Shown piece after piece: positions 40,801 to 63,554 of a DNA stretch of 64,000 nucleotides. Numbering within the stretch: the stretch's first letter is position 1; each line of letters starts with the position of its first letter. The translations under genes and the position numbers were made by a program. The notes under the pieces were generated by a model, which saw only the letters and a program-made list of their open reading frames with translations, had not been told where the DNA came from and made no database searches. Origin of the DNA: Trichoplax adhaerens (taxonomy: Eukaryota > Animalia > Placozoa); assembly GCF_000150275.1 (NCBI RefSeq), contig NW_002060948.1, positions 62,001-126,000 on the forward strand, read 5' to 3'.

Positions 40801-43800
40801 TAAGTCATGATTGTAAACTGATAAAATCATCCATAGAATTCTAATATTAAGATTTTTCCTTTATAAATCATCTGTACATAGTATGTAATGTTTACCTAGC
40901 AAAAGATAAATTAGAGCCAATAGGTGTAAATTAACTGCTATTACTGTCATCAACACATAGATCATGTTGCCGTTCCTAAATTTTATGCCGGTGCGATGGA
41001 AAATTGGGGTTTAAATTTATATCGGGAAGAAATTCTTACCTATAATCCTTATTATGTTAGCTCAAGATTACTAAAAACTATTATTGTTATCATTTCCCAC
41101 GAATTGTGTCATCAGGTAAGCAACATTTCTGCACTATCGATAACACGAGCGAGTTTTCATAACCTAATTAGTAACCCAGCTGTTTTACAGTACTCTCCTA
41201 AATTATATAGTTGGCAATATATAGCATGAATATGTTCAATCAATCTATACCTGTTATATTACTGATTGATCTGCTTTGATTTAATTTAAAAATTAGTGGT
41301 TGGGAAACTATGTTACCATACAATGGTGGAATCATATGTGGATCACTGAAAGTTTTTGCAACTTTTATCAATTTTATGCTGGTTCTATCCTTCAGCCCAG
41401 CTTCTTCTTGGTAAGACCTCGTTACTGAAGAAATCTTCAAGTATAGCTAGCGACAATTTCAATCAAAGTTTTACATGCTACGATACCCTCTATAATTATT
41501 CGAGCAAAAATTGTTGGATTTAATAATTTTAATACAGTATTCTCCTCGAATAATTCTGTCTTCTTGTTTCATGTACAATTTGCACAGAAACAACAATTTG
41601 TTACAGATAGTGTTCAAGTTGCAATGCTTGTAGATGCTACTCGTAGTTCGCACCCCTTGGTCTTACCGCCTAATCTTGGTCCCATTTTCGATAAAATTAC
41701 ATACGAAAAGGTATAATACTATTGACTACACCCTAGATTATTTGTATAAAATTAGTCATATCGATTTTTATATGATTCTTTTTGTTGACGTTGCCATTGC
41801 AGGGAGGATCTATCTTTCGCATGTTACGTGATTATATTGGTCCTGCGAATTATCATACTGGAGTAAAGGTAATTGTTTTGATTTCCTATTTATTAGGAAA
41901 TTTATCTATTCTAAGTTATTTTAATTATAGCGGAGAGTAATAATAATATACAGGCTGTAAATTAGGAATAATGACACCTTCCTCATTAGATGCGATTATT
42001 TAAGTTCTAATAGCTTATCAGGAATAATTCAACTTTAGTACTTAATTAGCAATATATTAATGTATAGTTACAACATTAGCGAAGGAAATCTGAAATTAAG
42101 ATTTTTATCTAAAATTTCTGGGATATTAGGCATTATTAAAGAAATATTTATATAGTAATATTGCAACAGAACAAGTGTTTCAAGCTATATCTGGAGTAAG
42201 TAAATGTTGGCATCGCATCATTTATTGGTAATATAATTTGCATTCTTAGGCGTACCGAAATTAGATAGATTTATAGTCTAGGTTTAATACTGCTCACTTA
42301 TTTAAGCTGTATTAGATGAAGTTGTTATCAATATGGAAACTTAATGATTGACCGTCTGTTTGCGGAATATTTTAGTAAATTTTTTTTGTTAATTTAGATC
42401 ATAACACACTGGGTTAGTTTAGTTATTCGTTATCTAAATTTTATAGAATCTGCGTATAGCCTTTACCAGATAAAAAGGAAATATTTGACTATTAGCTGCC
42501 TCCATCTATTTCTAATTGGCAGTAAATAATTAATAGATATATATCTTAATCTTATTTAAAATAGGCAATTCAAAGTCCAATTAACATCAGTGATTTTATG
42601 GGTCCTTGGGTATATCAAATGGGTTATCCATTGGTAACTTTAATTCGTCATCCCGGCAATCGTGGTTTGGGCATAATATCACAGCAACGTTACCTAACTA
42701 ATTCATCATTAAATCCTAGTACTGACCCTCCTGGTTCACCCTATCCTTCAACTTTTGGGTAAAATTCTTTGTATATTGTATAGCTGGTATTATAAATTGT
42801 GTACGCAAAAGCAAAGTAAAGGCCCTACAAATTAATTAATATTGAGCTATATGCTTTATTTCGAGATGTTATTATCGATTGCGAACCTTATTTCAAGTTG
42901 CTGCGATCATTGTCCAACTGTTATATAGTTATTTAAATATTGAAGCACTTGTAATATTGAACCCTAACAAGATGTAGTAGATGATAGGTTATATAAATGC
43001 AAAGTAAATGCCCTAACGGATTAATTATTATTGGGCTATCTGCTTCATTACGAGATAATGCTATGGATTGTTGAATTACTTTGATCACTATACAATCATT
43101 ATATAGGTATTTAGTTAATTAAGTGCTGTAGAACTTGTATACAGTATTAAACCAACAAGATATAGTACTGTAGAAGATTGCTTAATTGATTAAATAATAT
43201 TACGCATTTCGCTTCATTAAGAGATGAAACAACCAATGGCACAAATGATTTTAAATTTTATAGGCACTATTAAGCTTTATAAAGCTGTTTAATAGATTTA
43301 AAATGCAGTAGTATTGGTAAAACTAAGCCAAAAAGATGACGCGCATGCCATATTTAAGAAAGATTGATTAATAACTTGAATCAACTTCCTACTCTAGCTT
43401 TAGTAGTGGATTTTATGATAGCGTACACCGTAATACTGTTATATACATATGTAATTATTTCACAAAAATTTGACTCATTCTTACCTCTATAGCTACAAAT
43501 GGACTATTCCTATTCGATACTACAATTCAGGAGATAAAACTACTAAACTCCTGGTGTTTGATAGGACTTCAGGTAATAACCCATGGAGTAATAATATTTA
43601 TTATGCGAAACAAATTACTGCAAAGGCTCACAACAAAGATATGTACAGGTCTGATAGCCTACTAGATAAATAGAAAAATGGTATAAATTCTCTATGAACG
43701 TAATATGCGAATAATTTATAAATAAGTAATACTCCATAAAAGCTACTCATATTTAGTAATACGAAAAAGCCAGATTAAGAGTTCATTAGAAGAATAAATT

Positions 43801-46800
43801 TATTAAGTTTTGACTGTCATGAGAACTGGTAATGGATTATTACAAATTACGTTAAAATATTTCTGCTATAAAGACTCTAAAAGTTAAAATTACCGAGTAT
43901 CTAGCGTATAGATTTGTTGTATTCTATTAGAATTATTAATATTTAATAATTAGCTAGCGAAATTACGTCATGAATTTGCACGAGTATAAGATTTGTTGTA
44001 AGCTACCGAAATTGTTAATAACTCTTTAGTAATATCAGCTACAAAATATCTTACCGTGAATACTGTAAGTTTAAAAGTTACTAAATATCACCGATTTTTT
44101 CCTGCTATGTTAATGCTATTGATTCTTACTTGCTAGCCTCTGTTCAGATTGGTTGGCCAGCAAATACATGGATAAAATTAAATACCGACGAAATTGGTTT
44201 CTATCGCGTCAACTACCCTACAGAAAATTGGCAAGCTTTGGCTATGGCATTACAAACGGATAAAACTGTATGCAAATACGTTGTCAGTTGTAGTGGTTGC
44301 TATCTGTACTGAAAACTTTAGTAGAATATTCTAGATACGGTGATAAATAGTATAGGTGTAATTACTTTCAATTTTGATTATATTTAGCAATTTTCCGAAA
44401 CTGATATTGCCAATATGTTGGATGATGCTTTTCAACTTGCACAGTAAGATCGATAGAATAAATTAAAAGTAATTTTTACATTTTACGTAACAGTAATGAG
44501 GACACAAAATACTTTGAAAGTTTTATGTATAGTTGATAATTTGTTTTGTATATTGGATTATTTCAGGACTTATCGTATTAACTACATGATACCTTTAAAC
44601 CTAACCAAGTATTTATTTAAAGAGACAAATCAATTACCCTGGGGTGTTACTAGCCTTTACTATTCTGCAATGTTTCAACGCCTATCAAATAGAGGATCCT
44701 TTCAATATTTCTCAGTAAGTAGAGCTACTTTAGGATAAATACCCGTATCGGATTAAAATGAGTCTACACCTTTATTTTTTTCGCTGGGCATATTGTATCG
44801 TTCAGAAGCAGTCCCTACAATCACCTAGCTGTTATGCTCAAACTTTATAGAGTGGTGTATTTAAAATTTTTATTTATTACAGTAGGTGATTTATAACATT
44901 TCATATTATTGAATTGCCTAGAAATACTTTCAGAAAATAGCTGCTGTACAGGCCGATCGGTTTGGATTTTCTGATAACGGAAACTGGATATACAAGTAGG
45001 TGAAAAATGACGTATTAACAATAAGACAATTTAGTGGAATATTTTTATTCATAACGACATTGGAAGGCTTAGCATGATTATATTGAACTTTAATGTCTGT
45101 AAGAAACTTAGAAAAGACTAACTAACGAATTTTTAAAGTTAAATTTACACGGTTTTCTTACTATAAAGGCACTGGAAGTTTACTGTGCTATGAAGAAATT
45201 AACATACATATAATATACCAGTATTTTAGCAAGTACGGTAGTTCATAATATGGCGCATTAGATATTTCTACTTATAAAGAGACCGAAGATTTTGTAACCA
45301 TTATATTAACTACTTCAGCATTAGTTCATAGAGGTACACGGGGTAAATTTTAATAGACTAATCTTTCTGTTTATTATTTATTTACAATATAAAAGAAAAT
45401 CAATAGATTATTATGATTATATTGAAACTAGTATTTCTTTCAATAGTGTAATACCTAAAGGAGTAAATGATGAATTCCTATACTTTAATCTTACTTAGCG
45501 TTTTATAATTATAACATATCCTATAAAGCTTAGTAACAGCCTAAATTTTGTATGTAATTTCAGTTGATATAGTGGCAATACAAACTTGATATGAGATTCT
45601 TTTAGCAGGAAAATCATGATATCTCATTATCATTCGTATGATCTTAATTTTAGGGAAGCTCGAGCAACTGTGTTAGAGATGGCTTGTAGTACAGGTTATA
45701 AGCCATGTATTGCTAATGCCACAGCCATCTTCAAGAAATATATGCAAAATCCTACAGCCAATAAGTACGTAAATATGCTTAGATTCGAAGATTACAAATT
45801 AACTCGATGGTTTATATTTTCCTTCATTAATGATGCAACTGAACTGAGACCGAACTTCTTATATGATTCTCTACTTTTATCGTAGTATCAAAGGCACAAT
45901 TAGAGGAATTGTATTTAAGTATGGTATTGAAAATGGTGGTGCTACGGAATGGAATTTCCTATTTAAGCAATACAAACAATCGCTAAATATTGCCGATAGA
46001 CGAACTATGTTAAGGGCATTATCAGCCACAAAAATACCTTGGCTTATAAGAAGGTATGACTAAATGTAGAATGATTTTATGAGAAATACAAAGTTTAGAC
46101 CTAGTAATTTTTGAAGAATTATGTTAAGTAAACATATAATTCATGAATGGTTGGTAACATCCGTGCTATTATTATAGGTTCTTAAATTATACTGTTGATC
46201 CAACTAAAATTCCGTCAAGTTCCATGCAAACTGTTCTACTTAATGTTAATCGCAATACGGTAGGAAGGTATTTTACCTGGGAATTTCTGCGCGACCATCA
46301 AAACTTCTTGATGCAGAAGTAAGTAGCTTTGACTGGATATGTGCAGATTGGAATACTTCTCGTAATTACTGTTGTACTTTGCATAATAAAAGTATGATGG
46401 GCAAATAGATATTTGAAAATTTTATTGCATTTATATCGTAACCAATACGTAGATTTAAGACAACAAGATCAATTGTCCGCATTATTACTCAAAACTATGA
46501 CACTCCACTTCTGCTGAATCAGGTATACAACAATTTAAAGAAATTATTATTATACACGTATAAATAGCTTATGCTTTTCAACTTTAAATGTTGTAAGTAT
46601 GACGATAGATACAAACTGTAGTAACGAATGAGATTAACATAGTTAGCAAGACCTACTGGTATGTTTTGACATACCACTCTCGATTTGCCTAGAAATTAAT
46701 GCTTTATATTCGCCATTCTTTCAATAATATACCCAGATCTTTATTAGATAGAATGATAAATTATTTCCTTCATTATTATGACACTGTTGTTCACTATTAC

Positions 46801-47186
46801 AGCCAAATAGAAATTACGAATCGATAGAAACTGCTTAACAAGCATTTATTGTTAGAATTTATTATCAGTATATATGAGAATAATGTCTATAGATTGTGGT
46901 AGAAGGATTGCAAAAACTAATTGTTAATGGGTTATCTGACTATTACATCAATGGCATTTTTAGTTTAGTATGAAGCTGTTCCAGTTTAGTATAACTTTTA
47001 ATTTTATTAACCCAATTTATCATATGATAGGTGATGAATTACTTTAAAATGTTCCCAGAAAATTCAGGGAGCGCAAAATCTACGGAAGCATCTATTATTC
47101 AAAGAATTAAATCTAATATGCAGTATTTGCATCGGTGTGAAAGTACGCTTTCCACATGGTTTGCGCAGAATGCAATAAATACGTAG
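37897..47186 (+). CDS. M1-family membrane aminopeptidase (aminopeptidase N/A-like), copy 1, about 19 exons
   Basis: Type II anchor AIGVIVFIILAVSVGLIAGL, Thr-rich stalk, [35 protein letters not shown]-x18-E, FDKITYEKGGS, WIKLN..GFYRVNY, and an ERAP1_C-like tail ending in stop at 47186. Confidence 0.93.
39228..39588 (+). repeat. Diverged tandem duplication of about 180 bp in intron 1 of aminopeptidase copy 1
   Basis: Two copies of acatataagct.tcatatagt.atg.gagcaaatag.t.gcactaa...aatgaagtaaaagtcagcggt...gaatcaatg.ttt.aagaagta. Confidence 0.85.
42805..43170 (+). repeat. Diverged tandem duplication of about 190 bp in an aminopeptidase intron
   Basis: Two copies of gcaaagtaaa.gcccta...attaatta.tattg.gctat.tgctt.att.cgagat...aacaagat.tagta. 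Confidence 0.75.
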
Positions 47187-47894
47187 TGAATCATTTTATC
47201 AACAGGTTCATAGAGAAGTAGATGTAAATGAATTAATTGCTAGTAAAGTATAGTACGTTAAAATAACATAATATAAATGTAAAATTTTTCTATTGGATTG
47301 CAATTTGCTTCATTTTTACTTGTTATAAACCCGTAGTGCACCATCGATTTCTATAACAGAATCCTTTTCATATACTTGTATAAGTATCTCATTCTGGAGC
47401 CTTTTGTATATTTACAAATCGTAGCAGAATGTTTTCCTCTGAAGTATATTGTCGATTAGTTCGTTAGATGTGCTATTCGTTCTAGTATACTAATGTAATG
47501 TTGTGGATATTCTTGAAGATAAATAGTTTATTGTATATCATTACGATGTATTATATTCTTCGGAAATAACGGAAATAAATGATAGAATTTGAGTTATAGG
47601 TGGTCTGCACTAAGTCTACACTACGCTATCGTCTGATCTTGGTAGACTTACTAGCCAGTCTGGCAATTTAATGATCATCGTTGCTATGGTTATTGACCTA
47701 GAATTACGTTATATAATTGATATTACACTTGAGAAGGTCCAACCTGGAGCTGTATAGCTCACCGCACATTATAATAAAATAGGATTTAAAATAGTTTATC
47801 AATTAAGAGAATTTCTCTATACGGCAACGGTAAGACAGTGTGAGATTTCTATGAGAACAAGTTGGGCTGGACATGATCTTTTCTAGCTATGAGC

Positions 47895-48690: not shown

Positions 48691-49024
48691 TCTTCAACCT
48701 ATTCAGGATACTGTAGTATAGGAATTCTTCACTTGCACTTTCCCCTTAACCAACTTGAACTCGGTGTCCTATACAACGCAGTAAGCGCTAGCTCCTACCT
48801 GATACCGTCAATAGCTGTTCCACTAGTTCCACAACAGCGTATCAGGCTGCTATAAGCCTTTGCCATGACGTATTGACTTTCTTCTTCAGTAGGAGAGGAT
48901 TCGACGGCCAGCGAACTTAGCACCATTAAAGAACTGCAGGTAAACCACTTGAAGAGAATTTTCCATTGGCATTTTCATCCTCTCTCGCTTTTTCATTCAT
49001 TTCTGATCGTCATTGAAGACTGAT

Positions 49025-52000
49025 ATGGTTGAGAGGATGGATGATGCTATTCCTTTAGTACTAGATGATCGTATAAAAAGGCGGAGACGTAGAGAGGTTA
49101 TGACAACATTCAGCAAGATCACACTTGGGGTTTTGTTGATGATATTGGTAATGAAACTATGGTTGCAATCAGAAATGATCAGACCAACCATGACATTTGG
49201 TTATAAGGGAAATAGAACAGTCGAAACAACAAGATCATCGATCATGTCGACTGATAATCCAAGGGATGATTTACCTGGCTCCCATTTCCTGCCTAATATC
49301 AAAGCCAAGGAATATTATGTCAACTTGAGCATGGATATCAACCAATTTCAATATAATTTAATGTTTATTATACGTATTGCTGTTCTATCTCCAACAAATA
49401 CTATTATTCTTCATGGTAATGGTATCGACATGAAGTCAAAACCTCAAATTACTCGTAGCTTGGACTTTCATCAGACTTTAATACAGTATCGTCTTCGTAA
49501 CGCTAGCAGAAGATCAACTCAAAATGCCAGCCGTTACTCTCTCGTCCTCGATAAAAATCTAGCAATCGGTCATTATTATATTCGCTTCAATCTTACTTCT
49601 CAAATAGCTTCAAAATTTCTTAGATGTTGTAAAGACGAAAAGAATTCGTAAGTAGATCATGTAATGATTTTGGAATGCACTACTTCTAATGAACATCAAT
49701 AGACACGGTAATAAGATGGTGACAGTCGATTCTATCCTATGAAGCAACAAGAGCTACTAGACGAGTCACATTGGACTGTAATGAAAGATTGGATAGCATC
49801 ATAAATTGATTCTTAGTACCTAATTAGGAGTAGTATACAAAAAATGTCGTTTAGTGTCAAAAATTTGAGCGACAAGTTTCTAATCTGATTAATTACACAT
49901 ATGATTATTACAAGAATCATAGGAATACTTTCCTTAAATGAAATGCTACCCTTGCCATAATACTGTAGAAAATGAATTGTTAATCGCTAGTCAAGGCTCC
50001 CCATCCAGTACTTTCATAGGTTGTATACTTTCCCATCACATGATAAGGCAAAGACTTGTCAAAGTTATCCCTTAGTCTAAAAGACAGATTGTAATCGCTA
50101 AATTTAGTTCACCAGCAACTGCTGATGAAGTTCAATTATATCCTAAGCTATGACTACAAATAGACATTTACCTATGTTGATGAAATAGCGTTCCATCTTC
50201 AAAATTTTTATTCTTCCAATTTAAAGCCTAAAATATGCCTACAAGATAGACACCTGCCATTGACTTATTCTTGTTAATGAACTTATACGTATGACAGAAA
50301 CAGTACAAGGACCACTAATGTTTCCTTAATGAGTTTTTTAATTACTTCTAGTGTGTTATAACTTTCTTTAAAGGGGCGTTTGAGATATTGTACTAACTGC
50401 AATAAATCACATAGTATTGATATTGCAGCGATTGATAGCTTTCGCTGATTTTTTGATCGAATTGGCTCATTTATTTTCTTCCTTTAAACTAAACGTAGTC
50501 GAAGCGGAATGTTATCCTCCCTGAAAGTCTTACCGTATTTAAACGAAAAGCTATTCAAGATCAATTTTAAAGCCGTTATCGTAGCTCATAAGGATTACCA
50601 GCTCAGATGGAATACACAATATGCTCGAAAAGCATCTGTAAGTTCAAACAAGATCTCCTATACCTTTGGAGGTAAGTAAGACTAAAGTTTAAGATATTGT
50701 TTCTATTATGACTGTATATTCTAAAAGATAAATGCCTTTCAAGTACAGTACAGTAGTCAGCAATGTATTATACTTGGACAATTTTTTATGTTCATTGTAA
50801 CAATAATGATGTTAATATAGATGTGCAACATAAGATTATGCTATAGTTAATAAATCCAGAGCAGTATATGATTATTGTGGCGTTATGATCATTTGTTGCA
50901 ATCTAGCTGCATACGGCTAATAAACTATTCTTCCATTCCTTTTGATTTAGCATTCAATTTTATGTCATCACGCCTGTACATGGTTTTACAGAGTGCTGCC
51001 AATTTATTAACAGATGGTCAAAGCATCATTACGAACGAGCTATTGCGCAAAATAGTAAGTATACCAACCACCACTATCTGAATATTTAAAACAATTAAAA
51101 TTGTATATATTAGTACACTCATTTCAAAGCTTCGATTCGCATTGACTTATCGATTAGTTAAAGATGCTATTTGAAACATTATACTCTAGGTCAGTTATAA
51201 AATGGATCCTTTATCTGTTAGTCAAGAAATTCAGAAATCAGGTATTAACACCCAAAGGAATAATCGAATGCATCGTCAATGTGAAAAATTAAATTTGAAA
51301 GTTGCCAAGCAAAAGTGGGGAAGTCCGTATAATCAAAGTTTTCTTATCATCCAATGGGATACTTCTTGGCAGCCCGGGGAATTCGATTTTATAGCAGTAT
51401 TTAATAAGATTCCAAAATCACCTTTTAATCATTTACCACGTCAGTACTATTGGATCAAGTACGCTAGAAATAATACCATTGTAACTGATGTTGTATATAG
51501 GCAAAATTTATATTACTATGTAGTCTACTATACCTATAAACGCAATCCTGCAAGTTTGCAAGGATTTGGTTTTACTCCTGTGAAAGTCATATGGATTTAT
51601 AATAATCTGACCAACTTGCCTGCCATGCAAGATGACTCTGGTTATGCAGCTCAGCCTCATCCTAGAATTAGTCCTCAAGATGTTAACATCAAAGAAAGTG
51701 TTATACAATTACAGGACAGCCAGAACTATACTAATCATTATCCTTTCTTGACAGCTTCTGGTCAGCACACATTAGACATTGGAATTGACTTAAGTTTAAC
51801 GTTTAATTTAAACTGGTATCATCCTCATGATGTGGACAAGTGGGATTATGTTGCTATTTATAATCATGATCCTAAGAATGATAGTGGTTACATTGCAAAT
51901 CAGTGGTGTTGGGTAAGTGATTACAAAACTGGATTCTGTAATACAGGTGTTCAATTTGATCGCCAGCATCATTATTTTGCCGCCTACATTAGTTATGATT

Positions 52001-52899
52001 ATCATGCCAAAAAATATGTTATTAAAGAGTCTATGAAATATCCCAATCATAGCCACTGGATGAGTGATTTAAAGAACTCCATTAGTAAAGTAAAACTAAG
52101 AGATCTAATCCTTCCTGGAACCCATGATTCTGCTTGTTATGATATGGTATTTTCTTTAGCGGATTCATGGACGCAAACCCAATCAGAAACGTTCGAGAAT
52201 CAACTTTTAGATGGAATACGCTATTTTGATTTACGCACAGAATATAAGAAAGGCAGTAAGGATAAATTTCGCTTCGTACATAATACGTGGCTAACTACTA
52301 CTAGTGTACCAAATTTTCTGCAATCAGTAAAGACCTTTGTCTCTAAATATCAAGAAATTATAATACTAGATTTTAATCACTTTTATTATTTCAATGCGAA
52401 TATTCATGATGAATTAATTGAAGTAATCATGAAGCATATTGGCAATGATATGGCTCCCATAAGTTTCACACAAGATGTTATTATTGGCAAAATGTGGGAT
52501 CAAAATAAGCGTATTATTGTAGCTTATGATGGTAAAAGTCAATCATTAAAGAATCGAAACAATAAGAAATTGTGGCCAGCCATTCGATCAGTATGGCCCA
52601 ATGTAGATCATGTTCAAGATGCTAAGAAGAAACTTGATCAAGAAGTTGATCGTAATCATACCAGTCTATGGGTTCTACAGGGAATTCTAACGCCTCTATC
52701 AGAGTCAATAATACCTTTTAGCGTTCAACATTTAGCCAATACTATGAATTCAAATCTAAATACTTGGTTAGAGAACGATTGGCTGCATAAAAGTATCAAC
52801 ATAGTTATTTCAGATTTTTATCTAGGTAACAATGTAGTATCAATTGCAGTGCAAAGAAATCAAGCTAAAGACCGTGCTCTAAATGTAACAATTGGATAA
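49025..52899 (+). CDS. Chimeric aminopeptidase-N-terminus / PI-PLC X-domain protein (exons 49025-49647, 50499-50671, 50951-51054, 51190-52899; about 869 aa)
   Basis: Exons 1-3 are diverged homologs of aminopeptidase exons 1-3 with the same intron phases (2,1,0). Exon 4 carries PI-PLC motifs LILPGTHDS, QLLDGIRYFDLR, FVH, EIIILDFNH and NIVISDF. All junctions are canonical GT-AG and in frame. Confidence 0.8.
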
Positions 52900-55803
52900 A
52901 GATTATTTATAATCTGATCGTTGACTACATTTTATTCTTGTAGGATCCTCTAATGTTTATTTTAAGACTAAAAAGTATATATACGCATGTAGCTATCGAA
53001 CTGCTAACTGATAAGGTCGTATAGCAGACTATAAATAGAAAATAATGAAAATATCATATCTGTGAAACTACTGTACAGTACTGCCCTACAGTGTACTTGC
53101 AAATGTTCACATTAAAATTAGTTCATAGAACTACCATTCCTAAGTACATTAAATTACTAAATTACTATTCCATCATCATGAGAGTTCTTAACGTTAAAAT
53201 GTTTGTCATTTATATTGATTTCCGTACTATAAAATTTTTATTGTAAGACATGCCATTAATATTATCAATGGTCGATATAAACAGTTTCTTGGATTAGAAT
53301 TTGAGATGAATCATACATTACTCAACAATCGCCTATTTAAGGTGTTTAAGCGTTTACATTTAATAGGATACAGATTTTAAAAAGCAGTTCAAACCTGTTT
53401 TCAAATTCGATTATACGCATATTTCGTTAGAAAATGAATAAACTAATAGAAGAAGTAAGATACTCGTGTTAGATAAGATAGATATGTTTTGAATAAGTCT
53501 CTCACTTCAGTGATAATTTTATGCTTTTTGTTGAACTATGATGGCAGGACAAGTTGACCAAAGTCACTTTTTAAACTTTGTCACTTCTGTAATAAAATTT
53601 AAGGGATTCTTTGAAGTATTTGATTACTCAAAATAAAATTTCACTACAAGATTTGATGTATATTAATTAATACTGAACCCATACCAAGTCCAGAGTAGTA
53701 CAATTTTCATTTTAATGAGAAATATAGAAAGTTGTTGTAATATAACTGAAAGCGATACAGAGATGGCCAATCTTTCATATCTGCAGTAGTTTAAGGCGTT
53801 CAAAAGGTGTACTTGGCCATAGCTTTAATGACTTTCATATACGCGTATTGTAAATTACAGTTTTTGTACTTCATCCTGGTAAAATTGAATTTGTAAATAT
53901 TGTTTTGTGCATTTGAATGATAAGCAATGATATGCATAACACACTATGACTTTAAAGGCTCAGTAATTATAGAATTTAAATAGAAGTTTGTATCGTTATG
54001 CCTTTTTCAGTGAACGTAATAATTTACTGAATTGATCGGCAAATGGTGGCATATAATAGTAATAATAAATTATACCGCAGTAATTATGGGATCCTAATAC
54101 GCAAATTATATCCAATCATTTCCTCTTATATAAGCCTAATAGAAGGCTTATATTATTATTAAAATTTAAATATTTTAAACCATTTCAAATGCATACTATA
54201 CGTTTAAGCTGTAATCAGTGTCCAGAATAAAACAGGCCAGAATAGCTTTTGTATTATGAAGCATTTCTCTGTCAGTTAAGTAAAGAAAAATTTAAAATAA
54301 ATATGCTTATTAAATTGTAACTCAGCATTTTACTTGAATTAAAGTCCTTCGAAAATTTCCTTAGGAATCTAATTGTGCTAATACAGCATAACGTGAATAA
54401 GATGAATGTAAAATAAGTTTAACCTATACGTGTAGCCTAAGGGATGATATGATATGATTTATGGGCGGGTGAAATGCAGCATAGTTGATAACTTATTTAG
54501 GTATTTCTATATCTTTGCGTTTTAATTAATCATGGTTGTAGAAAAACGACATATACTAAATAGGATTTGCAATAGTGATAATTAGGCTAATCTTTGCTTC
54601 TGATTCATTCATCTATCTTAGAGTGGCCAATTTCCGGGTTTGTACTTTATAGTTTTTATTTAATCATGTAGTAACGTTAATTTTACTCTGACTAACGAGT
54701 TTACTTGCAATAATGTCTTATTGAATTTTGCCAGGCATTAATACGTTTGTTGTAAATAGCCTACGCCTATGTACGCTATAGATTGTGCTAGGTGATGTTG
54801 CGAAAGGGATGAAAAGGTGAGTGCGAAAGAAAAATATAGCTAGAGGGAAGATATCATATGACCTGTAAGTGGGAGCAACTTAGCGAGTGGGCTTTCTTAG
54901 AAATTATTGTAATAGCAGAATAGTTATAGTGCTATTCAAGCTACTAATTCACGACAATGGTACTGTTCAGTCATTTATTGGCAGTTTTATTGCATAACTG
55001 ATTTTATAATGATTACTTTCAACATTTTATCACGTACCATGATTATAGAAAGCATTCAATGGAACGCCGAAAAAGGCATCTTATTGTAATATACTTGGTA
55101 AGATCATTAATTGATTTATAAACTGATACAAATAGGTAATTATTACTTTGGTCTATTATTTATATCATATATTGGCAATATGCTTGCGCTTATCAGTTTG
55201 GAGTCATGGATGTTACCTTTTATATATGATATAAATTATATGCTATTCCATATAATGATATTGATTGACCAAGTAATCCTACTATAGACTTAAGGTTACG
55301 CATATTTGATTAAAACTTTTTATTGTAAGGATTTATTACAAGTACATTTTTTATTGGCGGCTACATCAATTACAGAAGTGCTGAAATAGATTTTAAGTCT
55401 GATAATTTACCAATAGTTATCAGTATTGTCTTGGTTATACAATATAGCGGTTTATATATTATACTCGGCGTTTCCATTGCCTAGAAGGGTTCTATTTTCC
55501 TTTGATTATCGTCGACTCAATGTGGTCGTGCAATGATTATAACGGCAAGATAGTAACAATCGGATGCAATAAGAGTCTTACGATATTAATTAACTTTGAA
55601 TAATTATCGGATGATTTTATTGCATAATCAAACGATTTCTGGGCGTGGAACTAATGTTATGTAAATGATGTCAAAAGATTGATACAAGATACACATAAAA
55701 TAGGTAAAGGTTGATCTTGTGGCGATTAACCTGCCATAAAGCATCGTTTGCTACCACGAGCGGATTGTACCTGAGGAGGTAGTAGTAACGATCGCAAAAC
55801 AAC

Positions 55804-58800
55804 ATGTCGGAAAAACAAGTTCCAGATGTTCAATACAAGGGTAATGGAGAGCAGAAAGGCTTCTTCGTCAGCTATACTCAATTGGCTATTGCGGTAGTTG
55901 TTGTTATCGCAATTACTGTTGCAGTTGGCTTGATTGCAGGATTAACTGGCAATGCAGGAAGCGGTAGTCAAGCATCAACAGGTGGAACCACTGTTGCAAC
56001 AACGATGGCTACCACTAAAGCCGCCGCTACGACAAAAGCAACCGTAGCTAGCACTACCAAAGGCCCAACTGTTAAGCCGACAACCCCAGCACCGCCAAAA
56101 TATCCTGCTTTGGCTAAAGCTCGTTTACCCACAGATATTAAACCATCCGAATATTATTTTGAGTTAGACGTCGATATGACTACTTTATCATATACTGGCA
56201 TCAATGTTATCAACTTTACTGTTGTTAATCCAACCAACATAATTGTCGTCCACATCGATGGTATTACTGTGACAGGGACTCCACAAGTTAGTACCGATCG
56301 CTACTTTAGTACTGGATTGCAGAATGTTATTGATCAAGGCAGCTACGCCAAAAACAACTATTACTACACCGTCCTTCAGAGTAACCTGCAGGCTGGTGGC
56401 GTATATTATGTTCGGTATACCTATAACGCAAAATTATCTAGCGATCGTAGTGGATTTTACAAGTATCAGTACACTAGAGCTTCGGATCGTGCAACTGTGT
56501 AAGTATAAAAACTAAAACGATAATGATTCAAATCAACCACTACTATAAGCTATATTTTAAGAGATAATTTACTCAATTATAAGAACAAATGGAGAGGGAG
56601 TTAAACTAGCTAGGAAACATAATATCCTACAGGAGAGAATATAACAATTCTTGCTACGAAGATTACTCTACAGACCCCCCTACTATTAACTTGTAAACAC
56701 TTTATTGATGCTAATTTGTGACGGTAAAGTGATCATACCAGCACACAATATCATTTAAGCTCCCTACTGATTTGATTTATAGTGAAAATGACAGTCTTGA
56801 ATAATATCATCTTTAGCTATTGATAGAAAATTTTTTAGCAACGCTAGATAAGGCGCGTATCGATGCATGTAAAATCTGGTCACAAATTATGAATTTTAAT
56901 ATAGGCAAATCTAGTTCTTGATAGGTGATTGATGAATACTGCATGTCAAATCATGGTAGCTACTTTACAAATATAGAATGAAAAAACTATTGTTATCACA
57001 GGTCTTTTACAGAATAATAGAGATTAAGGAGCGTCGTAACTGCTATGGCTAGGCAAAAAAGTTAGCAAGGAATAAATGCATACATGTACGAGTATGCCCT
57101 TATAGTAGGGTCAGTGAATGGAATAAGTTAGTATTTTAGATTACCTTTTAAAACAGCAACTGTTACGGATAAATTATACTATCGAAAAATCAAATTGGAA
57201 AGTATTGAAGTAATTTTGGATGATACGAGAACTGAAGAAGATTGCATAATTTTTATCATATTTATATCCCACTGTTCCAATCACTTCAACAGATATTTAT
57301 GATATCAAAATAGTTTGACTAAAAATTCTCGATAACGCATGTTCATGCCCCTCTCTTATCTTAGCATACCACGATTGAAATGGCTATGCTAGTTTAAAGT
57401 TTTAAGTTGAAGTATCTGTTAACTATTTTTTGCAAACAGTGTAGTATTAAGCTAAAAATTGGCTATTATAAATTATAAATTAATGCAATAGTATTCCGAT
57501 ATGATAGTGACTAGCTTAGCATCGTCATTATCTACTAGTGCTACATAATTAGTCACATGATAAAATTAGCATTCCTTAAAAAAGTTTTCAAAATATTACG
57601 GTAACATTTACCATAACTTCGATTAATAGCTAACATCGCTGACGTCAGGGCGACTCGAGGATACTCCTTGTCTTATTATCTTTAAAACCTCTTTGTACAC
57701 CGCGATATAATAGTTTGGGAAAAAATAGCCTATGGACAGATAAATGCGCTTCAGTACGTGCATATACTTTTACATTACAGTATACCCACGTATTTAGATA
57801 TCATATCCGACTGCCCTGGAATATAGGAAAGAGATTATTAAGTTACGGAAGTATATAGAATGCTTGCTTACAGAAATTATTATGTAATATAAAATTTCCA
57901 TTGGATTTACATACGATCTCAAATATCTTGCTAATTGTTAATATTAAACTTTACGAATTAAATTGGACGAAGGAATGCTTTTGAAGTAATGGGATATAAT
58001 AACTAGATCGATCACTGTTGACCGTTATCTTTATTAGCATGATAATAGTGATTGGTACATGAAGTCTCTGTGATATCTTTATTATATTAATATTTTTCTT
58101 ATATCAAATTATTGTATTGACCGTTACAGTTTATCGCATTGTCATTAATATCGGATGATTCAATGTTCGTATGACCACATTATTTGTGCAAAACGTTTTA
58201 TTTTCAACCAACGTTAAGAGCTATAATTTCCACGCCTTCTATTGTAAACTAAGTTTACTAAACGGTGACCTATACTTATTTCCTAGTCTTATTTCCGTTA
58301 ATAGAAACACTATGATTACCCTTATAATTGAGATGAAAAAATAAAAGGGGCAAAATAGCAAAGAACCTACGACGATCATTTCCCGTAAATGAAAAAAATA
58401 AAAATATCTCAATTTGAAATTGAGATGTGTAATATCTTAAGAAAAAAGAAAGCTATAACTATCTATACTTTTCCTGATATTTATCGACCCTAACTTGCCG
58501 GTATTGATGTTAATATGTATTGAAATGATAGTAAAACTGGTAGTATTAACTACCTTCCTTAGCGGGTTTGACATCACATGTAATAAGTTAAACAACTTGC
58601 TTTTGGGTGGGATCGCAATGTCATTATTCCATAATTTAACTTTTCTACGTCTACCTTTATGCAAACAAATTTACGCTCACTGTTCAAATGTTGCTACTGA
58701 TAGTGCGTGGATGATTTCCTAAAATAAACATACATAGTTCCTTCAGGTTATACGTATCATGATGATTTGATCAATACACACATCATTGAATACTTATTAT

Positions 58801-61800
58801 AGCTAAAGGGCAAATTTAATATCAGCACGATATGCAATCGATATGGATAAACGTGACATTGTCACAGTTTTTTAATGTTGTCAAGAATAAAATAACCTTA
58901 CTTTTATAAGGAAAATGATCAAAAACATAAAATTCGATATATAGTGGCTAGCAGTTCTTGAAGATTGATTTTCGAGCTGTCCTAGTATAAAATATAGATA
59001 TTGATGAAATTACTCGCAGTTTATCAGTGCCTAGGAAAAAGTGTTTCTAATCCGTCAATGTTTTGGTACACAAAATACTAAAAAGTACCGATATTGAAAC
59101 TAAAAGAGCCGTTATATCGTAGTTGAGTTCAGCTACATACACAAGAAAAATCAAAATTTTAATTACTGCAATTAACTATCAAAAGAAAATGTTATTAAAT
59201 ATAATTATAGACAGACTACAATATCTAACAACAGTTTCTACATAATAAAAAGAGATATGGAATAAAATCACCATAAATTTGGGGGCATAAATCTTTAATG
59301 TTTACTAAAATTATTGCCAACTTCAAGAAACGGTGAATGAAATCCTTGAAATTGTAAAGATGCTTAAAGGCGCTATCAGTGAACGCCAAAATAATAGTTA
59401 TGGCCAATTTTAGAAAGTTGTCTGAAACATTTACTTGGTAGAACTGTCAGTGATGTAATGATTCGATAATTTTTCCTTTCCTTAGTTATTCTCTTAGTCA
59501 TGTACAAAGTGAAAGAGTTTTTGTATCATATCACCAAATTCAAGACAATATGTCTCCGTAACACTTGTAATTCTTATTTAATAATCGATTTGTATGAGCC
59601 TGTTGTTATACCGCTTACAATATAGATAAATTGTAAAAATAATAATATCTTGATAATTTGCATGATAGATGGGCTGCAGCAAGTCAATTAGAAGATTTCT
59701 ACGCAAGAAGAGTTCTTCCATGCTTTGATGAACCCGCAATGAAAGCAACCTTCCAGGCTAATATCACGGTACCCAGCAACTACAGTGCCTTATGGAATAC
59801 CATGAGAACTGGTGTAACTATGATGGGCGATAAGAAGCGCTTTGAATTTTCTAGTAAGTGTTCTATAACAGTCATATTATGATCAATTGTCGTAATCATT
59901 TGATAGTCCTGAAATGAAAGATTTTCTGATTTTGGGCTAACTAAATTACTTCGTTCTACTTTACGGTAATTTAGTCTGCTTTGTTAACTGTATGCGTATA
60001 TCTATTATTTAGCCAAAACTCCAGTCATGTCCACATACTTAATGGCATTTACTGTTGATGATTTCGTTAACGTCAATGGTACAACTAATCGTAATACAAT
60101 GGTAAATAGATATTTAATTTGAGATAGAATCCTCTTTATGATATATTATATATATTATAGTCATGTCCTTTCATAATTTTCAATTCAAACATAACAGTTT
60201 ATTCTTTTTCTGTAGGTTCGCGTATTTTCTCGTCCTGGTATAAAACAATATAGCAATTATGCCCTTGGAGCTGCTATTAACATTACAGAATATTTTGAGA
60301 GTCTTTTTGGCCTAAATTACCAAATGGGCAAACAAGGTAATGGCCTTGATTCTATCAAGAATTTAATTTAATTTAATTACTATATTACGACTAATGTAGA
60401 CAGCTGCAGTAAAATTGCCCAAAAATTTGACGAATCTTATTCCATTATATTATTGATAAAACCCTATAGATCATGTCGCAGTTCCTGTTTTTGCTGCCGG
60501 TGCTATGGAAAATTGGGGTCTTATTTTATACCGTGAGGAATTATTAAGCTACGATCCCTACTACATTAACTCCAACGGTCTAGAATCGATTGTTACCGTC
60601 ATTTCTCACGAATTGGCTCATATGGTAAGTCCATCCAAAACTGACCTGTCAAAATGTACTTTGAATTTATTTATTTGGCTATATCCTTACATTGATAATC
60701 TATCATTCATTTAGTGGTTTGGTAACTTGGCTACTTTACAATGGTGGAATCATTTGTGGTTAAATGAAGCCTTTGCCAACTTTTTCCAGAATTTTGGTGC
60801 TGCTCCTTATGAACCAGGCCTGTTCTTAGTAAGTCTATAAGATTTGCACACATTTATTGGCTAGAATTGTATCAATGGCCACGATTAATTTATTGCTATC
60901 TGTAATCGTTATTATTAGATGCAGCAATTTGTTCTGGATAGCGTACAGAGCGGTTTGTCAACTGATTCCTCTCCAACCTCTCATCCAATTGTTCCACCTT
61001 CCGCATATGGTCCGTTCTTTGATAGAATCACTTATCAGAAGGTATTACTAGCGATAATAAAGTGTTATAAGCTAAATTTTAAAATTTCATTGATAAAGGC
61101 GCAATAAGGAATATCATACTATTCGTCTTATTTCGATCTGTTAGCTTAAAAAATCTCTTCCATTTATTACAATTATAGGGAGGTTCTGTTTTACGTATGT
61201 TCCGCGATTATCTTGGTCATGATAACTTTTTCACCGGATTAAGGGTATGCAAATTTAGATTACGTATATTAGCTATAATTATTTATAATACCGCACTCTT
61301 CTCTTAGTAAGGTATTTCATTCATTGTTGTATAGCAAATCATTTTCATTTCAAGACTACCTGACGATTAGCTGTTATTACGATTACATTAATACGAAATA
61401 GGGTGATATATTGCGGAGAATTTTAAGGAATTAATAACAATGATGATGACTGATTTGGTGTCATCTTATAACGATAATTTAATAGTCTGTGAAAATATTT
61501 ATTTCTGTGGCTACGATTGTATCAGTTAAAAGCTTGTAGAAAGGTCAACGGAAACTTTCAATAAGGAGTTTGGCTAATAATACTGATTAATGCAGTGATT
61601 TCGAAAATCTAGAATCATTACTTAACTTTCCCTATTTGCAATGATATTTGTCCCTTTGATTGTCGGTACATTGTTAAAAAATGTGGATGATCCCACGTTG
61701 CATTAGGAATTTTGATGAATAATCGGTATAGCGACGACAAGCTCAATGTTCCTAAAACACTTAATTAGCTGGGAAAGATATTCTGTAATCTATAAATCAG

Positions 61801-63554
61801 TTGCTTAGTTTGCGTGTGCAAGCTAGTTGTGAAGTAACATAGTTTCACGGAAGATAACAATTTTTATTCTATTCACTAGGGCTATTTGAACGATTACTCG
61901 TACAGTAATGCCGATACCGTACAACTGTTTGCCTCATTGACTAAAGTAAGTGAGCATAACTTTAATTGTAATTTTGCGTCTATAAATGAAAGATAAAGAT
62001 GATAGTCATAAGTTGCTGCTACACTTATGGCTCATAAACACTAGCAATGAAATCAATATAAAAACTTTCATCTATAATACAATATCTACGATGATTAATG
62101 CAATATCTGTTTCACTCAATATTAATTTAGGCTGTTGCTCAAAATCCATTTAATATCAGCGAATTTTTGGGCCCATGGGTTTACCAGATGGGTTACCCAG
62201 TGGTTAATGTAACTCGAGATACACAGAACAATCAAGGTGTTATGACTCAACAAAGGTAACGTGTAGTTCTTGAACTATCTATATTCTATAATGTTGATAA
62301 GAATATGATTTACTAATATGATGATATCATTCCTGAAGCAATCTTGTCCGTTAAAATAATTCTGTTATGGTTATAGTAATCTGCCTTTACTGAAAGTATT
62401 TTATAATAGCTTAGTTCAAATTTAAAAAATTTTCCTCTTCTAAAATCATTTGCATCGATTCATAACAGATATCTTAATAACAAGGACGCAAATCCAAGTC
62501 AGGAAGGAACTGGATCTCCATATGTGTCACCATACCAGTAAGTAATAATTATCTGCTATATCTGTAAATTGTAGGACATTTTCATAGAGTTAATCCTAGG
62601 GATATAGTAAATTATTTAAAAAGCAATTATAATCTTCTTGAGTTTGTGCGATCTCAATCTAATTTCATAAGGAATTTCCAATTAGGAAGAAATAGATAAC
62701 ACTAATATATTAATTGATTTTTGATATGAAGCATCTGAAATCTATTTATGATAAAAATTAATTCATATTATTGATAATTATTTCCCTTGACAGATACAAA
62801 TGGACAATCCCAGTAAACTATTATGATCAAGCATCATCTAATGTCAGACGAGTTGTCTTTGGAATGAATGATGGTAAAGCCTATATACTGAACAGTTCTA
62901 TTGAGGAAGTAAACTGTTCATAGATCAACATTTCTAACATTGGTATTTGATTATATAGCTCAAGCTGTTGTTCCTTGGCCTGCAAATAGCTGGATCAAAT
63001 TGAATGCTAACCAAATGGGATTCTATCGTGTTATGTATCCAATCGATAACTGGAATCGTCTAGCTACTGCTTTGCAAAGTAATCTAAATGTAAGTGCAGT
63101 AATTAATAAACTAAAATTTTAATGGCCAATATTATATTCGTATAATGACAGCTTCGTTTATGCCCCCGAAATCGAAAAATATTATATCCTAGCATATTAA
63201 TCTCCTGTAATCGTATCTCTTTCTAAAATAATTATAGGTGTTGCTGAATACAGACAGAGCTAATCTGTTAGATGATGCTTTCACTTTTGCTTTGTACGTA
63301 TAACTTATCAACAGCCTTGAAAATGCACGATTTTCATAATCTTAAAGAGTACGCTTTAAATATCATAATTACTAACATTATGTATCTTCCAACCCGATTC
63401 TATTAGGACTAAGCGCCTCGATATTACTGTACCTTTAAGTCTTACCAAGTATATGTCAAATGAGGTCGACCATCTGCCATGGACCGTTGTTTCCAATAAC
63501 TTTTTCAACTTTCGGTTACGACTTTCCAACAGACAGTCTTTCCAACATTTTGTG
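55804..63554 (+). CDS. M1-family membrane aminopeptidase, copy 2 (continues beyond the window)
   Basis: TM segment [21 protein letters not shown], Thr/Ala stalk, [92 protein letters not shown]. Same exon structure as copy 1. The last visible exon ends at about 63554. Confidence 0.93.

What the first reader, a model, noticed from the sequence alone, without database searches (positions are those of the whole stretch)
49025..52899. Chimeric gene: aminopeptidase membrane anchor and N-terminal domain fused to a phosphatidylinositol-specific phospholipase C (putative ecto-PI-PLC)
Seen in sequence: a third gene sits between two intact M1 aminopeptidase genes. Its exon 1 (TM LGVLLMILVMKLWL, LPNIKAKEYYVNL, YYIRFN), exon 2 (VLPYLNEKLFKINFKAVI...RWN, compare MIPCFDEPALKATFQATI...RWN) and exon 3 (FMSSRL, compare IMSTYL) are diverged copies of aminopeptidase exons 1-3. 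They have identical intron phases 2/1/0 and no stops or frameshifts. The phase-0 donor at 51054 meets a phase-0 acceptor at 51189 that leads in frame (VSYK-MDPL...) into the 565-aa ORF. The zinc-peptidase exons (GAMEN, HEXXH) are absent and are replaced by a PI-PLC X domain. Established knowledge: M1 aminopeptidases are type II membrane ectoenzymes, and bacterial-type PI-PLCs use a His/Arg/His triad (here PGTHDS, FDLR, FVH) and can cleave PI and GPI anchors. Inference: exon shuffling produced a surface-displayed phospholipase that borrows the aminopeptidase's targeting and possibly its expression, for example for external digestion of prey membranes or GPI shedding. The ORF track splits this gene into three unrelated ORFs, so automated annotation could miss it.
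Basis: partly seen in the sequence, partly recalled or inferred. Interest (0 to 1): 0.92.

Follow-up and report, generated by a model that had tools for sequence, protein, structure and literature searches.

The report
Aminopeptidase-anchored PI-PLC fusion gene
In the simple marine animal Trichoplax, a spliced four-exon gene joins the membrane anchor and first domain of an aminopeptidase N copy to a bacterial-type phosphatidylinositol phospholipase C; it is a real example of gene birth by exon shuffling, but public annotations already contain the gene model.

Summary
One spliced RNA-derived contig covers 48760-49647 | 50499-50671 | 50951-51054 | 51190-53200+. The joined CDS is 2610 nt (869 codons) with no internal stop.

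Exons 1 and 2 are diverged copies of aminopeptidase N (APN) exons 1 and 2. Intron phases 2/1/0 match those of both flanking APN genes. Exon 3 matches only by position, phase and a short motif. Exon 4 is the complete CDS of an intronless PLCXD-like gene, and its acceptor lies directly before the ancestral start codon.

The model is not new. GenBank holds it as TRIADDRAFT_57039 (814 aa, lacking the anchor) and as Trichoplax sp. H2 RDD44880.1 (869 aa, identical exon chain).

- The truncated-APN exon 1 forms its own fast-evolving clade, with open copies in two further unnamed lineages that look placozoan.
- Of three Trichoplax PLC paralogues, only this one has upstream APN exons and keeps every catalytic residue.

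Ecto-orientation and PI/GPI cleavage remain untested inference. The scan holds no earlier report of this locus.

The parts
48760..49024 (+). 5' UTR, minimum extent (start of the spliced contig)
   Evidence: X5 contig starts at 48760, X6 at 48825, X15 at 48902. It holds only one 3-codon uORF, and an in-frame stop lies upstream of ATG 49025.
49025..49647 (+). Exon 1 CDS (phase-2 donor): basic cytoplasmic tail, signal-anchor helix, disordered stalk and first two thirds of an M1 domain-I-like beta sandwich
   Evidence: Matches APN gene A exon 1 at E=5e-17. A family profile hits solved aminopeptidase N at E=3e-13. The AF2 model shows helix 9-51, a low-confidence stalk 52-87 and strands 92-193 that match ERAP1/ERAP2/IRAP N-domains.
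49109..49165 (+). Predicted signal-anchor / transmembrane segment (residues about 29-47), preceded by RIKRRRRRE
   Evidence: It is the only segment of the 869-aa protein with a Kyte-Doolittle 19-residue mean of about 2.0. It aligns to the anchor helix of the APN paralogues.
49648..50498 (.). Intron 1 (GT..AG, 851 nt)
   Evidence: Joint 49647/50499 in X5.
50499..50671 (+). Exon 2 (phase 2 in, phase 1 out), a diverged copy of APN exon 2; the PCFDEP motif has become PYLNEK
   Evidence: In the genome-wide search the best non-self hits are APN exon 2 copies, E=2.4e-4 and 0.006.
50672..50950 (.). Intron 2 (GT..AG, 279 nt)
   Evidence: Joint 50669/50949 with cut +2 in X5.
50951..51054 (+). Exon 3 (phase 1 in, phase 0 out); positional counterpart of APN exon 3
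   Evidence: Same phases as APN genes A and B, and size 104 nt against 80 and 89 nt. No sequence match was detected.
51055..51189 (.). Intron 3 (GT..AG, 135 nt); the acceptor AG belongs to the TAG that closes the frame upstream of the PLC ORF
   Evidence: Joint 51054/51190 in X5 and X6.
51190..52899 (+). Exon 4: the whole CDS of an intronless PLCXD-like gene plus stop; the first codon GTC aligns with the start Met of the stand-alone relatives
   Evidence: Paralogues are uninterrupted ORFs at 2.52 Mb and 3.00 Mb of the same scaffold.
51289..51636 (+). Beta-sandwich repeat 1 of the PLC part (ORF residues about 30-145)
   Evidence: AF2 strands with pLDDT 62-85. Internal repeat at E=8e-7. No Pfam family matched.
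51796..52041 (+). Beta-sandwich repeat 2 (ORF residues about 199-280), low model confidence
52042..52896 (+). Bacterial-type PI-PLC / PLCXD TIM-barrel domain; catalytic His at 52123-52125, Asp 52228-52230, Arg 52234-52236, His 52279-52281
   Evidence: phmmer against S. aureus PI-PLC E=8.5e-8. Foldseek against Listeria, S. aureus and B. cereus PI-PLC E about 1e-11, TM 0.64-0.77. Column conservation is. pLDDT exceeds 90 over most of the domain.
52900..53200 (+). 3' UTR; the contig runs about 395 nt beyond 53200
   Evidence: X5 record 8 is 3566 nt long and reaches record position 3171 at 53200.
37897..47200 (+). Flanking APN gene A (context): exon 1 37897-38517, exon 2 39841-40023, exon 3 40307-40390, GAMEN and HEXXH exon near 41000; the 3' end is approximate
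55804..64000 (+). Flanking APN gene B (context): exon 1 55804-56499, exon 2 59670-59852, exon 3 60015-60101, GAMEN and HEXXH near 60505; it runs off the window

Best explanation
This is a genuine, expressed chimeric gene of Trichoplax adhaerens. A partial copy of an aminopeptidase N gene from the local tandem array lies upstream of a complete intronless PLCXD-like gene. The partial copy comprises the promoter side and exons 1-3, which encode the cytoplasmic tail, signal anchor, stalk and M1 domain I. The phase-0 donor of exon 3 is spliced to an acceptor directly in front of the PLC gene's ancestral start codon. Translation from the first good AUG (49025) therefore yields an 869-aa protein. Its parts, in order, are a basic tail, one membrane helix, a disordered stalk, a degenerate M1 domain-I beta sandwich, two beta-sandwich repeats, and a bacterial-type, calcium-independent PI-PLC barrel with the His/Asp/Arg/His/Asp set intact.

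Shown: the splicing, the open frame, the origin of both halves, and conservation of the catalytic residues.

Inferred: by the positive-inside rule the helix acts as a type II anchor, or as an uncleaved signal. That would place the enzyme in the lumen of the secretory pathway or on the cell surface. There its accessible substrates would be GPI anchors or foreign (food) membranes rather than cytosolic-leaflet PI. The aminopeptidase-derived part would then serve as targeting device and spacer, not as a peptidase.
For: Transcript and frame:
- One contig carries all three GT..AG junctions, and a second study confirms the third.
- The 869-codon frame is open, whereas 0 of 20000 shuffles of the first 900 nt are stop-free.
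- The AUG at 49025 has G at -3 and +4, and only a 3-codon uORF lies upstream.

Origin of the halves:
- Exons 1 and 2 are homologous to the neighbouring APN genes and share their phases.
- APN exons 1-3 equal the Pfam M1_N domain.
- The stand-alone relatives P0002, P0003 and P0004 begin with Met at the position of exon 4's first codon, which here is GTC.

Constraint on the N-part:
- The exon-1 type forms a clade with 100/100 support, with open ORFs in two other lineages (P0122/P0127 and P0128). All keep a basic cluster, a helix containing a conserved Lys, an S/T/P-rich stalk, and the 7 invariant and 7 near-invariant core positions of the APN family.

PLC part:
- It aligns to bacterial PI-PLC by sequence and by fold.
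- It shows purifying selection in polymorphism data: 4 nonsynonymous against 6 synonymous changes, p=0.006.
- It is the only one of three genomic paralogues with all catalytic residues.

Both public annotations predict the same exon chain independently.
Against: - The N-part evolves about 3-5 times faster than the exon 1 of bona fide APN genes (branch lengths).
- Its polymorphism ratio (pN/pS 0.41-0.54) cannot be told apart from neutrality on 10-12 sites.
- Pfam no longer recognises it, and exon 3 has no detectable homology.
- An in-frame ATG at 51202 could still start a 565-aa stand-alone protein. Contigs cannot show transcript starts, so an internal promoter is not excluded.
- Stand-alone relatives have no signal sequence, so the enzyme domain was presumably cytosolic before the fusion. 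Whether it folds and works on the other side of the membrane is unknown.
- The hydrophobic stretch is short, about 16-19 residues, and contains a Lys.
- No enzymatic, topological or localisation data exist.
Confidence: 0.72

Rival explanations
1. The fused transcript is real, but the aminopeptidase-derived exons are a decaying relic that acts only as a long leader. On this view the working product is the 565-aa cytosolic PLCXD-like protein, made from ATG 51202 by an internal promoter, leaky scanning or reinitiation, like its stand-alone paralogues.
For: - The paralogues are stand-alone, intronless and lack a signal sequence.
- The N-part has an elevated pN/pS that does not differ from 1, long branches and no Pfam hit.
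- An ATG lies 4 codons into exon 4.
Against: - A 300-codon frame with no stop in DNA of 37% G+C has a chance probability of about 6e-10.
- The same exon type is open in two further lineages and retains the family's core residues.
- All three splice phases are preserved.
- Scanning ribosomes would meet 49025 first, in a good context, and further AUGs (for example at codons 5, 26, 51 and 56) before reaching 51202.
- No contig starts near 51190, though contigs are weak evidence on this point.
Confidence: 0.15
2. The fusion protein is made, but the PLC-like domain is not a phospholipase in vivo. It would then be a membrane-tethered lipid- or glycan-binding protein, or act on another phosphodiester. 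The family tolerates catalytic loss and carries two lectin-like beta sandwiches.
For: - Paralogues P0003/P0004 have lost the Asp and Arg equivalents, and P0005/L012 have lost the first His.
- Relatives in fungi and bacteria are fused to lectin or propeller modules (Pfam column).
- The Pfam PI-PLC-X score is under its cut-off.
Against: - This copy and its 68%-identical orthologue keep the His, Asp, Asp, Arg, His and C-terminal Asp columns that are invariant or nearly so in 36 relatives.
- In the barrel, polymorphisms are 1 nonsynonymous against 6 synonymous.
- Mammalian PLCXD2 was recently reported to hydrolyse PI directly (bioRxiv 10.64898/2026.09.13.750855).
Confidence: 0.1
3. The junctions are an assembly or annotation artefact, and the locus holds an aminopeptidase pseudogene beside a separate PLC gene.
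For: The T. adhaerens model dates from an ab initio annotation, and the runs laid here are contigs rather than raw reads.
Against: Three exact GT..AG junctions lie in one contig. One junction recurs in a second study, and a contig of a declared RNA-Seq run ends exactly at the exon 1 donor. The independent H2 annotation has the same chain.
Confidence: 0.03

Closest known systems
PLCXD proteins (PI-PLC X-domain-containing proteins 1-3 of animals; plant DNF2) and bacterial PI-PLCs of Bacillus, Listeria and Staphylococcus
   Same: The single TIM-barrel catalytic domain aligns over its whole length to solved bacterial PI-PLCs (Foldseek E about 1e-11, TM up to 0.77). The His/Asp...Asp-x-Arg...His motifs are conserved. 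Insect and amphioxus PLCXD3 are sequence relatives at E about 1e-17. Bacterial enzymes of this type cleave PI and GPI anchors (statement in PMC3954807). PLCXD2 prefers PI.
   Different: Animal PLCXD proteins are about 320 aa with no membrane anchor, and the bacterial enzymes are secreted and soluble. This protein has 580 extra N-terminal residues: an aminopeptidase-derived anchor and domain, plus two beta-sandwich repeats. The Pfam PI-PLC-X score is below the curated cut-off. No activity has been measured.
Aminopeptidase N / CD13-type M1 ectopeptidases (type II membrane proteins)
   Same: The N-terminal tail, signal anchor, stalk and domain I have the same layout and the same exon boundaries and phases as the flanking genes. 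The exon-1 family profile hits full-length APN structures, anchor included.
   Different: The GAMEN and HEXXH-E catalytic domain and domains III and IV are entirely absent. The retained part is only 21-29% identical to its paralogues, and Pfam does not recognise it.
Chimeric genes born by partial tandem duplication or exon shuffling (for example the Drosophila cases in PMC5460883 and PMC1463047)
   Same: The 5' exons, and presumably the promoter, of one parent gene are joined by splicing to the coding body of an unrelated gene in a tandem-duplicated region.
   Different: The event is old, since the exon-1 type is shared by at least three divergent lineages. The recipient is a complete intronless CDS entered exactly at its start codon. 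The donor contributes a membrane anchor, which would move the enzyme across the membrane.
Known cell-surface or luminal GPI-cleaving enzymes (GDE2/GDPD5, GPLD1; from general knowledge, not tested here)
   Same: If the predicted topology is right, the function would be analogous: a phosphodiesterase facing the exoplasmic side where GPI anchors sit.
   Different: The folds and families are unrelated, and this resemblance is only a functional hypothesis.

Membership tests
Bacterial-type PI-PLC / PLCXD superfamily | Significant sequence similarity to family members | tested here: met
   phmmer against S. aureus PI-PLC E=8.5e-8 and B. cereus E=7e-6. PLCXD3 of insects and amphioxus at E about 1e-17.
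Bacterial-type PI-PLC / PLCXD superfamily | Pfam PF00388 (PI-PLC-X) at or above the gathering score | tested here: inconclusive
   18.7 bits against a cut-off of 23.1, E=0.0014, over only 69 residues. Relatives P0005 and P0006 pass.
Bacterial-type PI-PLC / PLCXD superfamily | Distorted TIM-barrel fold of bacterial PI-PLC | tested here: met
   The AF2 model has pLDDT above 90 over most of residues 281-565. Foldseek gives 24 PI-PLC entries at E 1.6e-11 to 4e-9, with target TM 0.64-0.77.
Bacterial-type PI-PLC / PLCXD superfamily | Catalytic residues: general-base His with partner Asp, Asp-x-Arg, general-acid His, C-terminal Asp | tested here: met
   H308, D309, D343, R345, H360 and D538 of the ORF are present and fall in invariant or near-invariant columns of 36 relatives. 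They align to the HDS / FDIR / HH motifs of 4f2t.
Bacterial-type PI-PLC / PLCXD superfamily | Hydrolysis of PI or GPI | not testable with these tools
   Needs an enzyme assay.
M1 zinc aminopeptidase (aminopeptidase N type) | GAMEN exopeptidase motif and HEXXH-(18)-E zinc site | tested here: not met
   No match to any APN exon beyond exon 2 between 47400 and 55700. The CDS goes from exon 3 straight into the PLC ORF. This gene is not an aminopeptidase.
M1 zinc aminopeptidase (aminopeptidase N type) | Peptidase_M1_N domain (PF17900) | tested here: inconclusive
   Pfam gives no hit, even at E up to 10, for the fusion or its two orthologue fragments. Exon 1 nevertheless matches APN paralogues at E=5e-17. 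The joint family profile hits solved APN at 3e-13. The exon-1 model matches ERAP/IRAP N-domains at rmsd 2.4-3.8 A over about 110 residues. That last result is partly circular, because most rows of the alignment are true APNs.
M1 zinc aminopeptidase (aminopeptidase N type) | N-terminal type II signal anchor | tested here: met
   A single hydrophobic segment at residues 25-47 (KD mean 2.0) follows RIKRRRRRE and aligns to the APN anchor helices. AF2 models a helix over residues 9-51. The actual topology was not tested.
Chimeric (exon-shuffled) gene | Parts derived from two unrelated parent genes | tested here: met
   APN paralogues for exons 1 and 2. Stand-alone PLC paralogues for exon 4.
Chimeric (exon-shuffled) gene | Both parts on one spliced transcript and in one reading frame | tested here: met
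Chimeric (exon-shuffled) gene | Both parts maintained by selection | tested here: inconclusive
   PLC part: pN/pS 0.16, p=0.006. N-part: pN/pS 0.41-0.54, not significant. However, the N-part keeps an open frame (p about 6e-10) and has open orthologous exon 1 copies in two other lineages that retain the core residues.

The most novel reading that the evidence does not exclude
Placozoans made a membrane-tethered, outward-facing PI/GPI-specific phospholipase C by putting a cytosolic PLCXD enzyme behind an aminopeptidase N anchor. This sole catalytically intact copy would work outside the cell, beside the neighbouring digestive ectopeptidases. It would either strip GPI-anchored proteins or attack the membranes of food organisms during external digestion. 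That would be the first animal ecto-enzyme of the PLCXD family.
Probability: 0.3. Interest if true: 0.6.

Novelty: new variant of a known kind. Interest (0 to 1): 0.45.

Why it matters
This is a clean, RNA-supported case of gene birth by exon shuffling in an early-branching animal. A whole structural module (anchor, stalk and one domain, ending at a phase-0 exon border) was joined to a complete intronless enzyme gene exactly at its start codon. If the predicted topology holds, the event moved a PLCXD enzyme from the cytosol to the exoplasmic side, which would give it new substrates.

PLCXD proteins are poorly understood in all animals. A naturally tethered, catalytically intact member beside two catalytically degenerate paralogues offers a useful comparison set.

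In practical terms, the T. adhaerens reference protein lacks the first 55 residues, including the anchor. Neither public record notes the aminopeptidase origin of the N-terminal 300 residues.

Tried and rejected
I could not read the DNA around the orthologue fragments P0002, P0122, P0127 and P0128. Linkage of exons 1-3 to the PLC ORF in other lineages, and dN/dS between species, therefore remain untested.
- Two scans of JGI metagenome contigs, with P0002 and P0122, found no relative.
- A word-indexed search with residues 1-304 of P0121 found only the gene itself, so no second organism with this architecture was found. That search is insensitive at 30% identity.
- Whole-protein alignments A1 and A2, meant to give one model of all 869 residues, misplaced the short exon fragments. 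I dropped them and folded the two halves separately, from A4 and A3.
- The ESM Atlas gave only weak leads (0.77, fn3_PAP) for the two N-terminal repeats of the PLC part. Foldseek gave no convincing match for them. Their family stays unassigned.
- Literature searches for the gene identifiers, and for PLCXD together with Trichoplax, returned nothing. The paper on bacterial DNA in the Trichoplax assembly does not mention this gene.
- I considered lateral transfer of the intronless PLC gene. I did not pursue it, because relatives are spread over animals, fungi and bacteria and three paralogues lie in ordinary animal sequence context.
- The spliced model was never typed or sent as a self-joined sequence to a search tool. 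Searches used single exons by reference or the public proteins P0001 and P0121, which are identical or near-identical to the model. Exons were joined only inside local scripts, to check the frame and classify variants.
Full report
**What the locus is.** The window is part of a Trichoplax adhaerens scaffold (G000:C1409:62001-126000). The protein it encodes is identical to GenBank TRIADDRAFT_57039. G+C is about 30-37% throughout. The region 37.9-64 kb holds two intact aminopeptidase N-type genes. Gene A has exon 1 at 37897-38517 and gene B has exon 1 at 55804-56499. Both have GAMEN and HEXXH exons. Further copies lie 131.6 and 142.2 kb along the scaffold. The finding lies between genes A and B.

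I laid contigs of four public runs on 48700-53200. Run X5 holds one 3566-nt contig covering 48760-49647, 50499-50669(+2), 50949(+2)-51054 and 51190-53200 and beyond. Run X6, from another study, has a contig that crosses 51054/51190. A contig of X15, a declared RNA-Seq library, ends exactly at 49647. Run X1 covers the stretch unspliced, so it is DNA or pre-mRNA. The donors are all GTAAGT and the acceptors are TAG or TTTAG. The joined CDS is 2610 nt, 869 codons plus stop, with no internal stop. The other two frames of the first 900 nt contain 21 and 20 stops, and none of 20000 shuffles of those 900 nt is stop-free.

**Origin of exons 1-3.**
- Exon 1 matches exon 1 of gene A at E=5e-17 (29% over 177 residues, anchor included) and gene B at E=7.5e-12. 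In the whole genome its only relatives are eight APN exon 1 copies.
- Exon 2 was searched in six frames against the 105-Mb genome. Apart from itself, its three best hits are exon 2 of three APN genes of the same array (E=2.4e-4, 0.006, 1.3).
- Exon 3 (34 codons) finds nothing. Its assignment rests on position, phase, size and the motif M-S-S/T-x-L.
- The three introns sit at homologous codons and in phases 2, 1 and 0 in this gene and in genes A and B.
- In the intact genes, exon 1 covers Pfam Peptidase_M1_N positions 1-115 and exon 2 covers 117-174. Exon 3 must cover the last dozen positions. The donated block is therefore tail, anchor, stalk and the whole of M1 domain I.
- No trace of later APN exons lies between 47.4 and 55.7 kb.

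**Origin of exon 4.** The 565-aa ORF has two paralogues in the genome, both uninterrupted ORFs on the same scaffold, at 2.52 Mb (52% identical, TRIADDRAFT_57375) and 3.00 Mb (38%). Neither has APN-like exons nearby. The stand-alone relatives P0002, P0003 and P0004 begin M-x-S/T/F-K/S-x-N-P. That Met aligns with the first codon of exon 4, which here is GTC. The ATG at 51202 aligns with Ala or Ile in the relatives. The acceptor AG is part of the TAG that closes the frame upstream. The fusion therefore entered the PLC gene exactly at its old start codon and took in no 5' UTR.

**What exon 4 encodes.**
- Residues 281-565 align to solved PI-PLCs of S. aureus, Listeria and Bacillus (E=8.5e-8 to 2e-3).
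- The AF2 model from a 36-row alignment has pLDDT above 90 over most of this part. It matches these structures along their whole length (Foldseek E about 1e-11, target TM 0.64-0.77).
- H308, D309, D343, R345, H360 and D538 sit in invariant or near-invariant columns.
- Pfam PI-PLC-X scores only 18.7 bits, below its 23.1 cut-off. The Pfam test alone would therefore have been equivocal.
- Residues 30-145 and about 199-280 form two related beta sandwiches (internal BLAST E=8e-7; strands). They have no Pfam family and no convincing structural neighbour.
- The other paralogue lineages are catalytically degenerate. P0003 and P0004 read PGTH(N/Q)S and FDLH. P0005 and L012 read PGTYCS and have Asn at the last Asp. 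Only the fused gene and its 68%-identical orthologue P0002 keep the full set.

**Is the aminopeptidase-derived part maintained?** An exhaustive HMMER search of 1.8 billion representatives with exon 1 found, as best hit, a 233-aa ORF (P0122, 40% identical). The hits below it were clear orthologues of APN genes A, B and others from unnamed contigs. A search with P0122 found a third form, P0128, at 58%. In a maximum-likelihood tree the fusion's exon 1, P0122 and P0128 form a clade with 100/100 support, set apart from all twelve true APN exon 1 sequences.

The path between the fusion and P0122 is about 1.9 substitutions per site. APN orthologue pairs, presumably from the same two organisms, show 0.3-0.55. 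The three share derived characters: a Lys inside the anchor followed by W-L, YYVNL-x-MD, YNLM, KPQI, FNLTS, and loss of the [11 protein letters not shown] motif. They still keep the 7 invariant and 7 near-invariant core positions of the family.

The truncated-APN exon type therefore predates the split of at least three lineages. It evolves several times faster than real APNs but has stayed open and fold-like.

Within Trichoplax, variants seen in the runs plus the H2 protein give 6-8 nonsynonymous against 4 synonymous changes in the N-part. That is pN/pS 0.41-0.54, not different from 1 (p=0.15-0.24). The PLC part gives 4 against 6, pN/pS 0.16, p=0.006. Selection on the N-part is thus supported by long-term evidence and not resolved by polymorphism.

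I could not show that the other lineages link this exon to the PLC ORF.

**Predicted protein and likely mechanism.** The first AUG of the transcript that opens a long frame is 49025, with G at -3 and +4. Only a 3-codon uORF precedes it. Residues 25-47 are the only strongly hydrophobic stretch of the protein, and RIKRRRRRE precedes them. AF2 models a long helix there, then a low-confidence stalk at 52-87, then strands at 92-193. Those strands superpose on ERAP1, ERAP2 and IRAP N-domains at 2.4-3.8 A. That last result is partly circular, because true APNs dominate the alignment.

By the positive-inside rule, and by analogy with APN, the N-terminus should be cytosolic and the remaining 820 residues luminal or extracellular. 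A calcium-independent PI-PLC in that position would meet GPI anchors or foreign membranes rather than inner-leaflet PI. This step, and any link to external digestion or to the expression of the neighbouring peptidases, is inference only.

**Comparison with what is known.** The gene model is public. XP_002113159 (814 aa) starts at Met56 and so lacks the anchor. RDD44880.1 of Trichoplax sp. H2 (869 aa) has the full chain and differs at seven residues.

Neither record names the aminopeptidase origin. Full-text searches found no paper on the gene or on this architecture. The residues 1-304 search found no other protein with this N-part.

PLCXD proteins are otherwise short and anchorless. PLCXD2 was recently reported as PI-preferring, and bacterial X-domain-only enzymes cleave PI and GPI anchors. 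Earlier notes of this scan describe catalytically dead APN paralogues in the same genome. They fit a picture of an APN family that is being remodelled, but I did not test them.

**Verdict.** The chimeric-gene reading is supported. The functional reading (an ecto-PI-PLC) is plausible but untested. I class it as a new variant of known kinds: an exon-shuffled chimera and a member of the PLCXD family. Interest is moderate.

**Method note.** No self-joined sequence was sent to any search tool. Searches used single exons by reference or the public protein ids, and exons were joined only in local scripts.

Noticed in passing
window 50046-50460 (inside intron 1): A contig of run X6 lies on 50046-50076 and 50172-50460 and skips 95 nt with CT..AC ends, which is GT..AG on the minus strand. 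Other unspliced contigs of X5, X6 and X15 also lie in intron 1. This suggests an antisense spliced RNA inside the intron, and I saw no obvious ORF there.
   Followed up: no
G000:C1409:2521195-2522859 (L011) and G000:C1409:3001855-3003477 (L012): The two stand-alone intronless paralogues of the PLC part have lost catalytic residues. L011 / P0003 has PGTHNS and FDLH. L012 has PGTYCS and Asn for the C-terminal Asp. Both are nevertheless intact ORFs with orthologues in other lineages (P0004, P0005), so they may be pseudo-enzymes.
   Followed up: partly
window 51289-52041: The PLC subfamily carries two related beta-sandwich repeats of about 100 aa ahead of the barrel (W-x-x-P..., D(F/Y)(I/V)A(V/I)(F/Y), QW/YYW). 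The second repeat has a conserved Cys pair. Neither Pfam nor the PDB gave a match.
   Followed up: partly
window 49025-49189 against XP_002113159: The T. adhaerens reference protein starts at Met56 (49190) and so omits the basic tail and membrane helix. The H2 model and the RNA contigs include them.
   Followed up: yes
G000:C1409 at 99.9, 118.1, 131.7 and 142.2 kb; C1414 at 8.87-8.89 Mb; C1411 at 2.88 Mb: At least eight APN-type exon 1 copies exist in the genome, four of them in the tandem array around the fusion gene. The first readers' notes s1-780407 and s1-739345 report catalytically degenerate members.
   Followed up: no
window 53069-53073: A 5-nt deletion relative to the window, in the 3' UTR, is shared by runs X1, X5 and X15. 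Exon 1 shows ten variant sites in 623 nt across the four runs, against ten in the 1710 nt of exon 4.
   Followed up: partly
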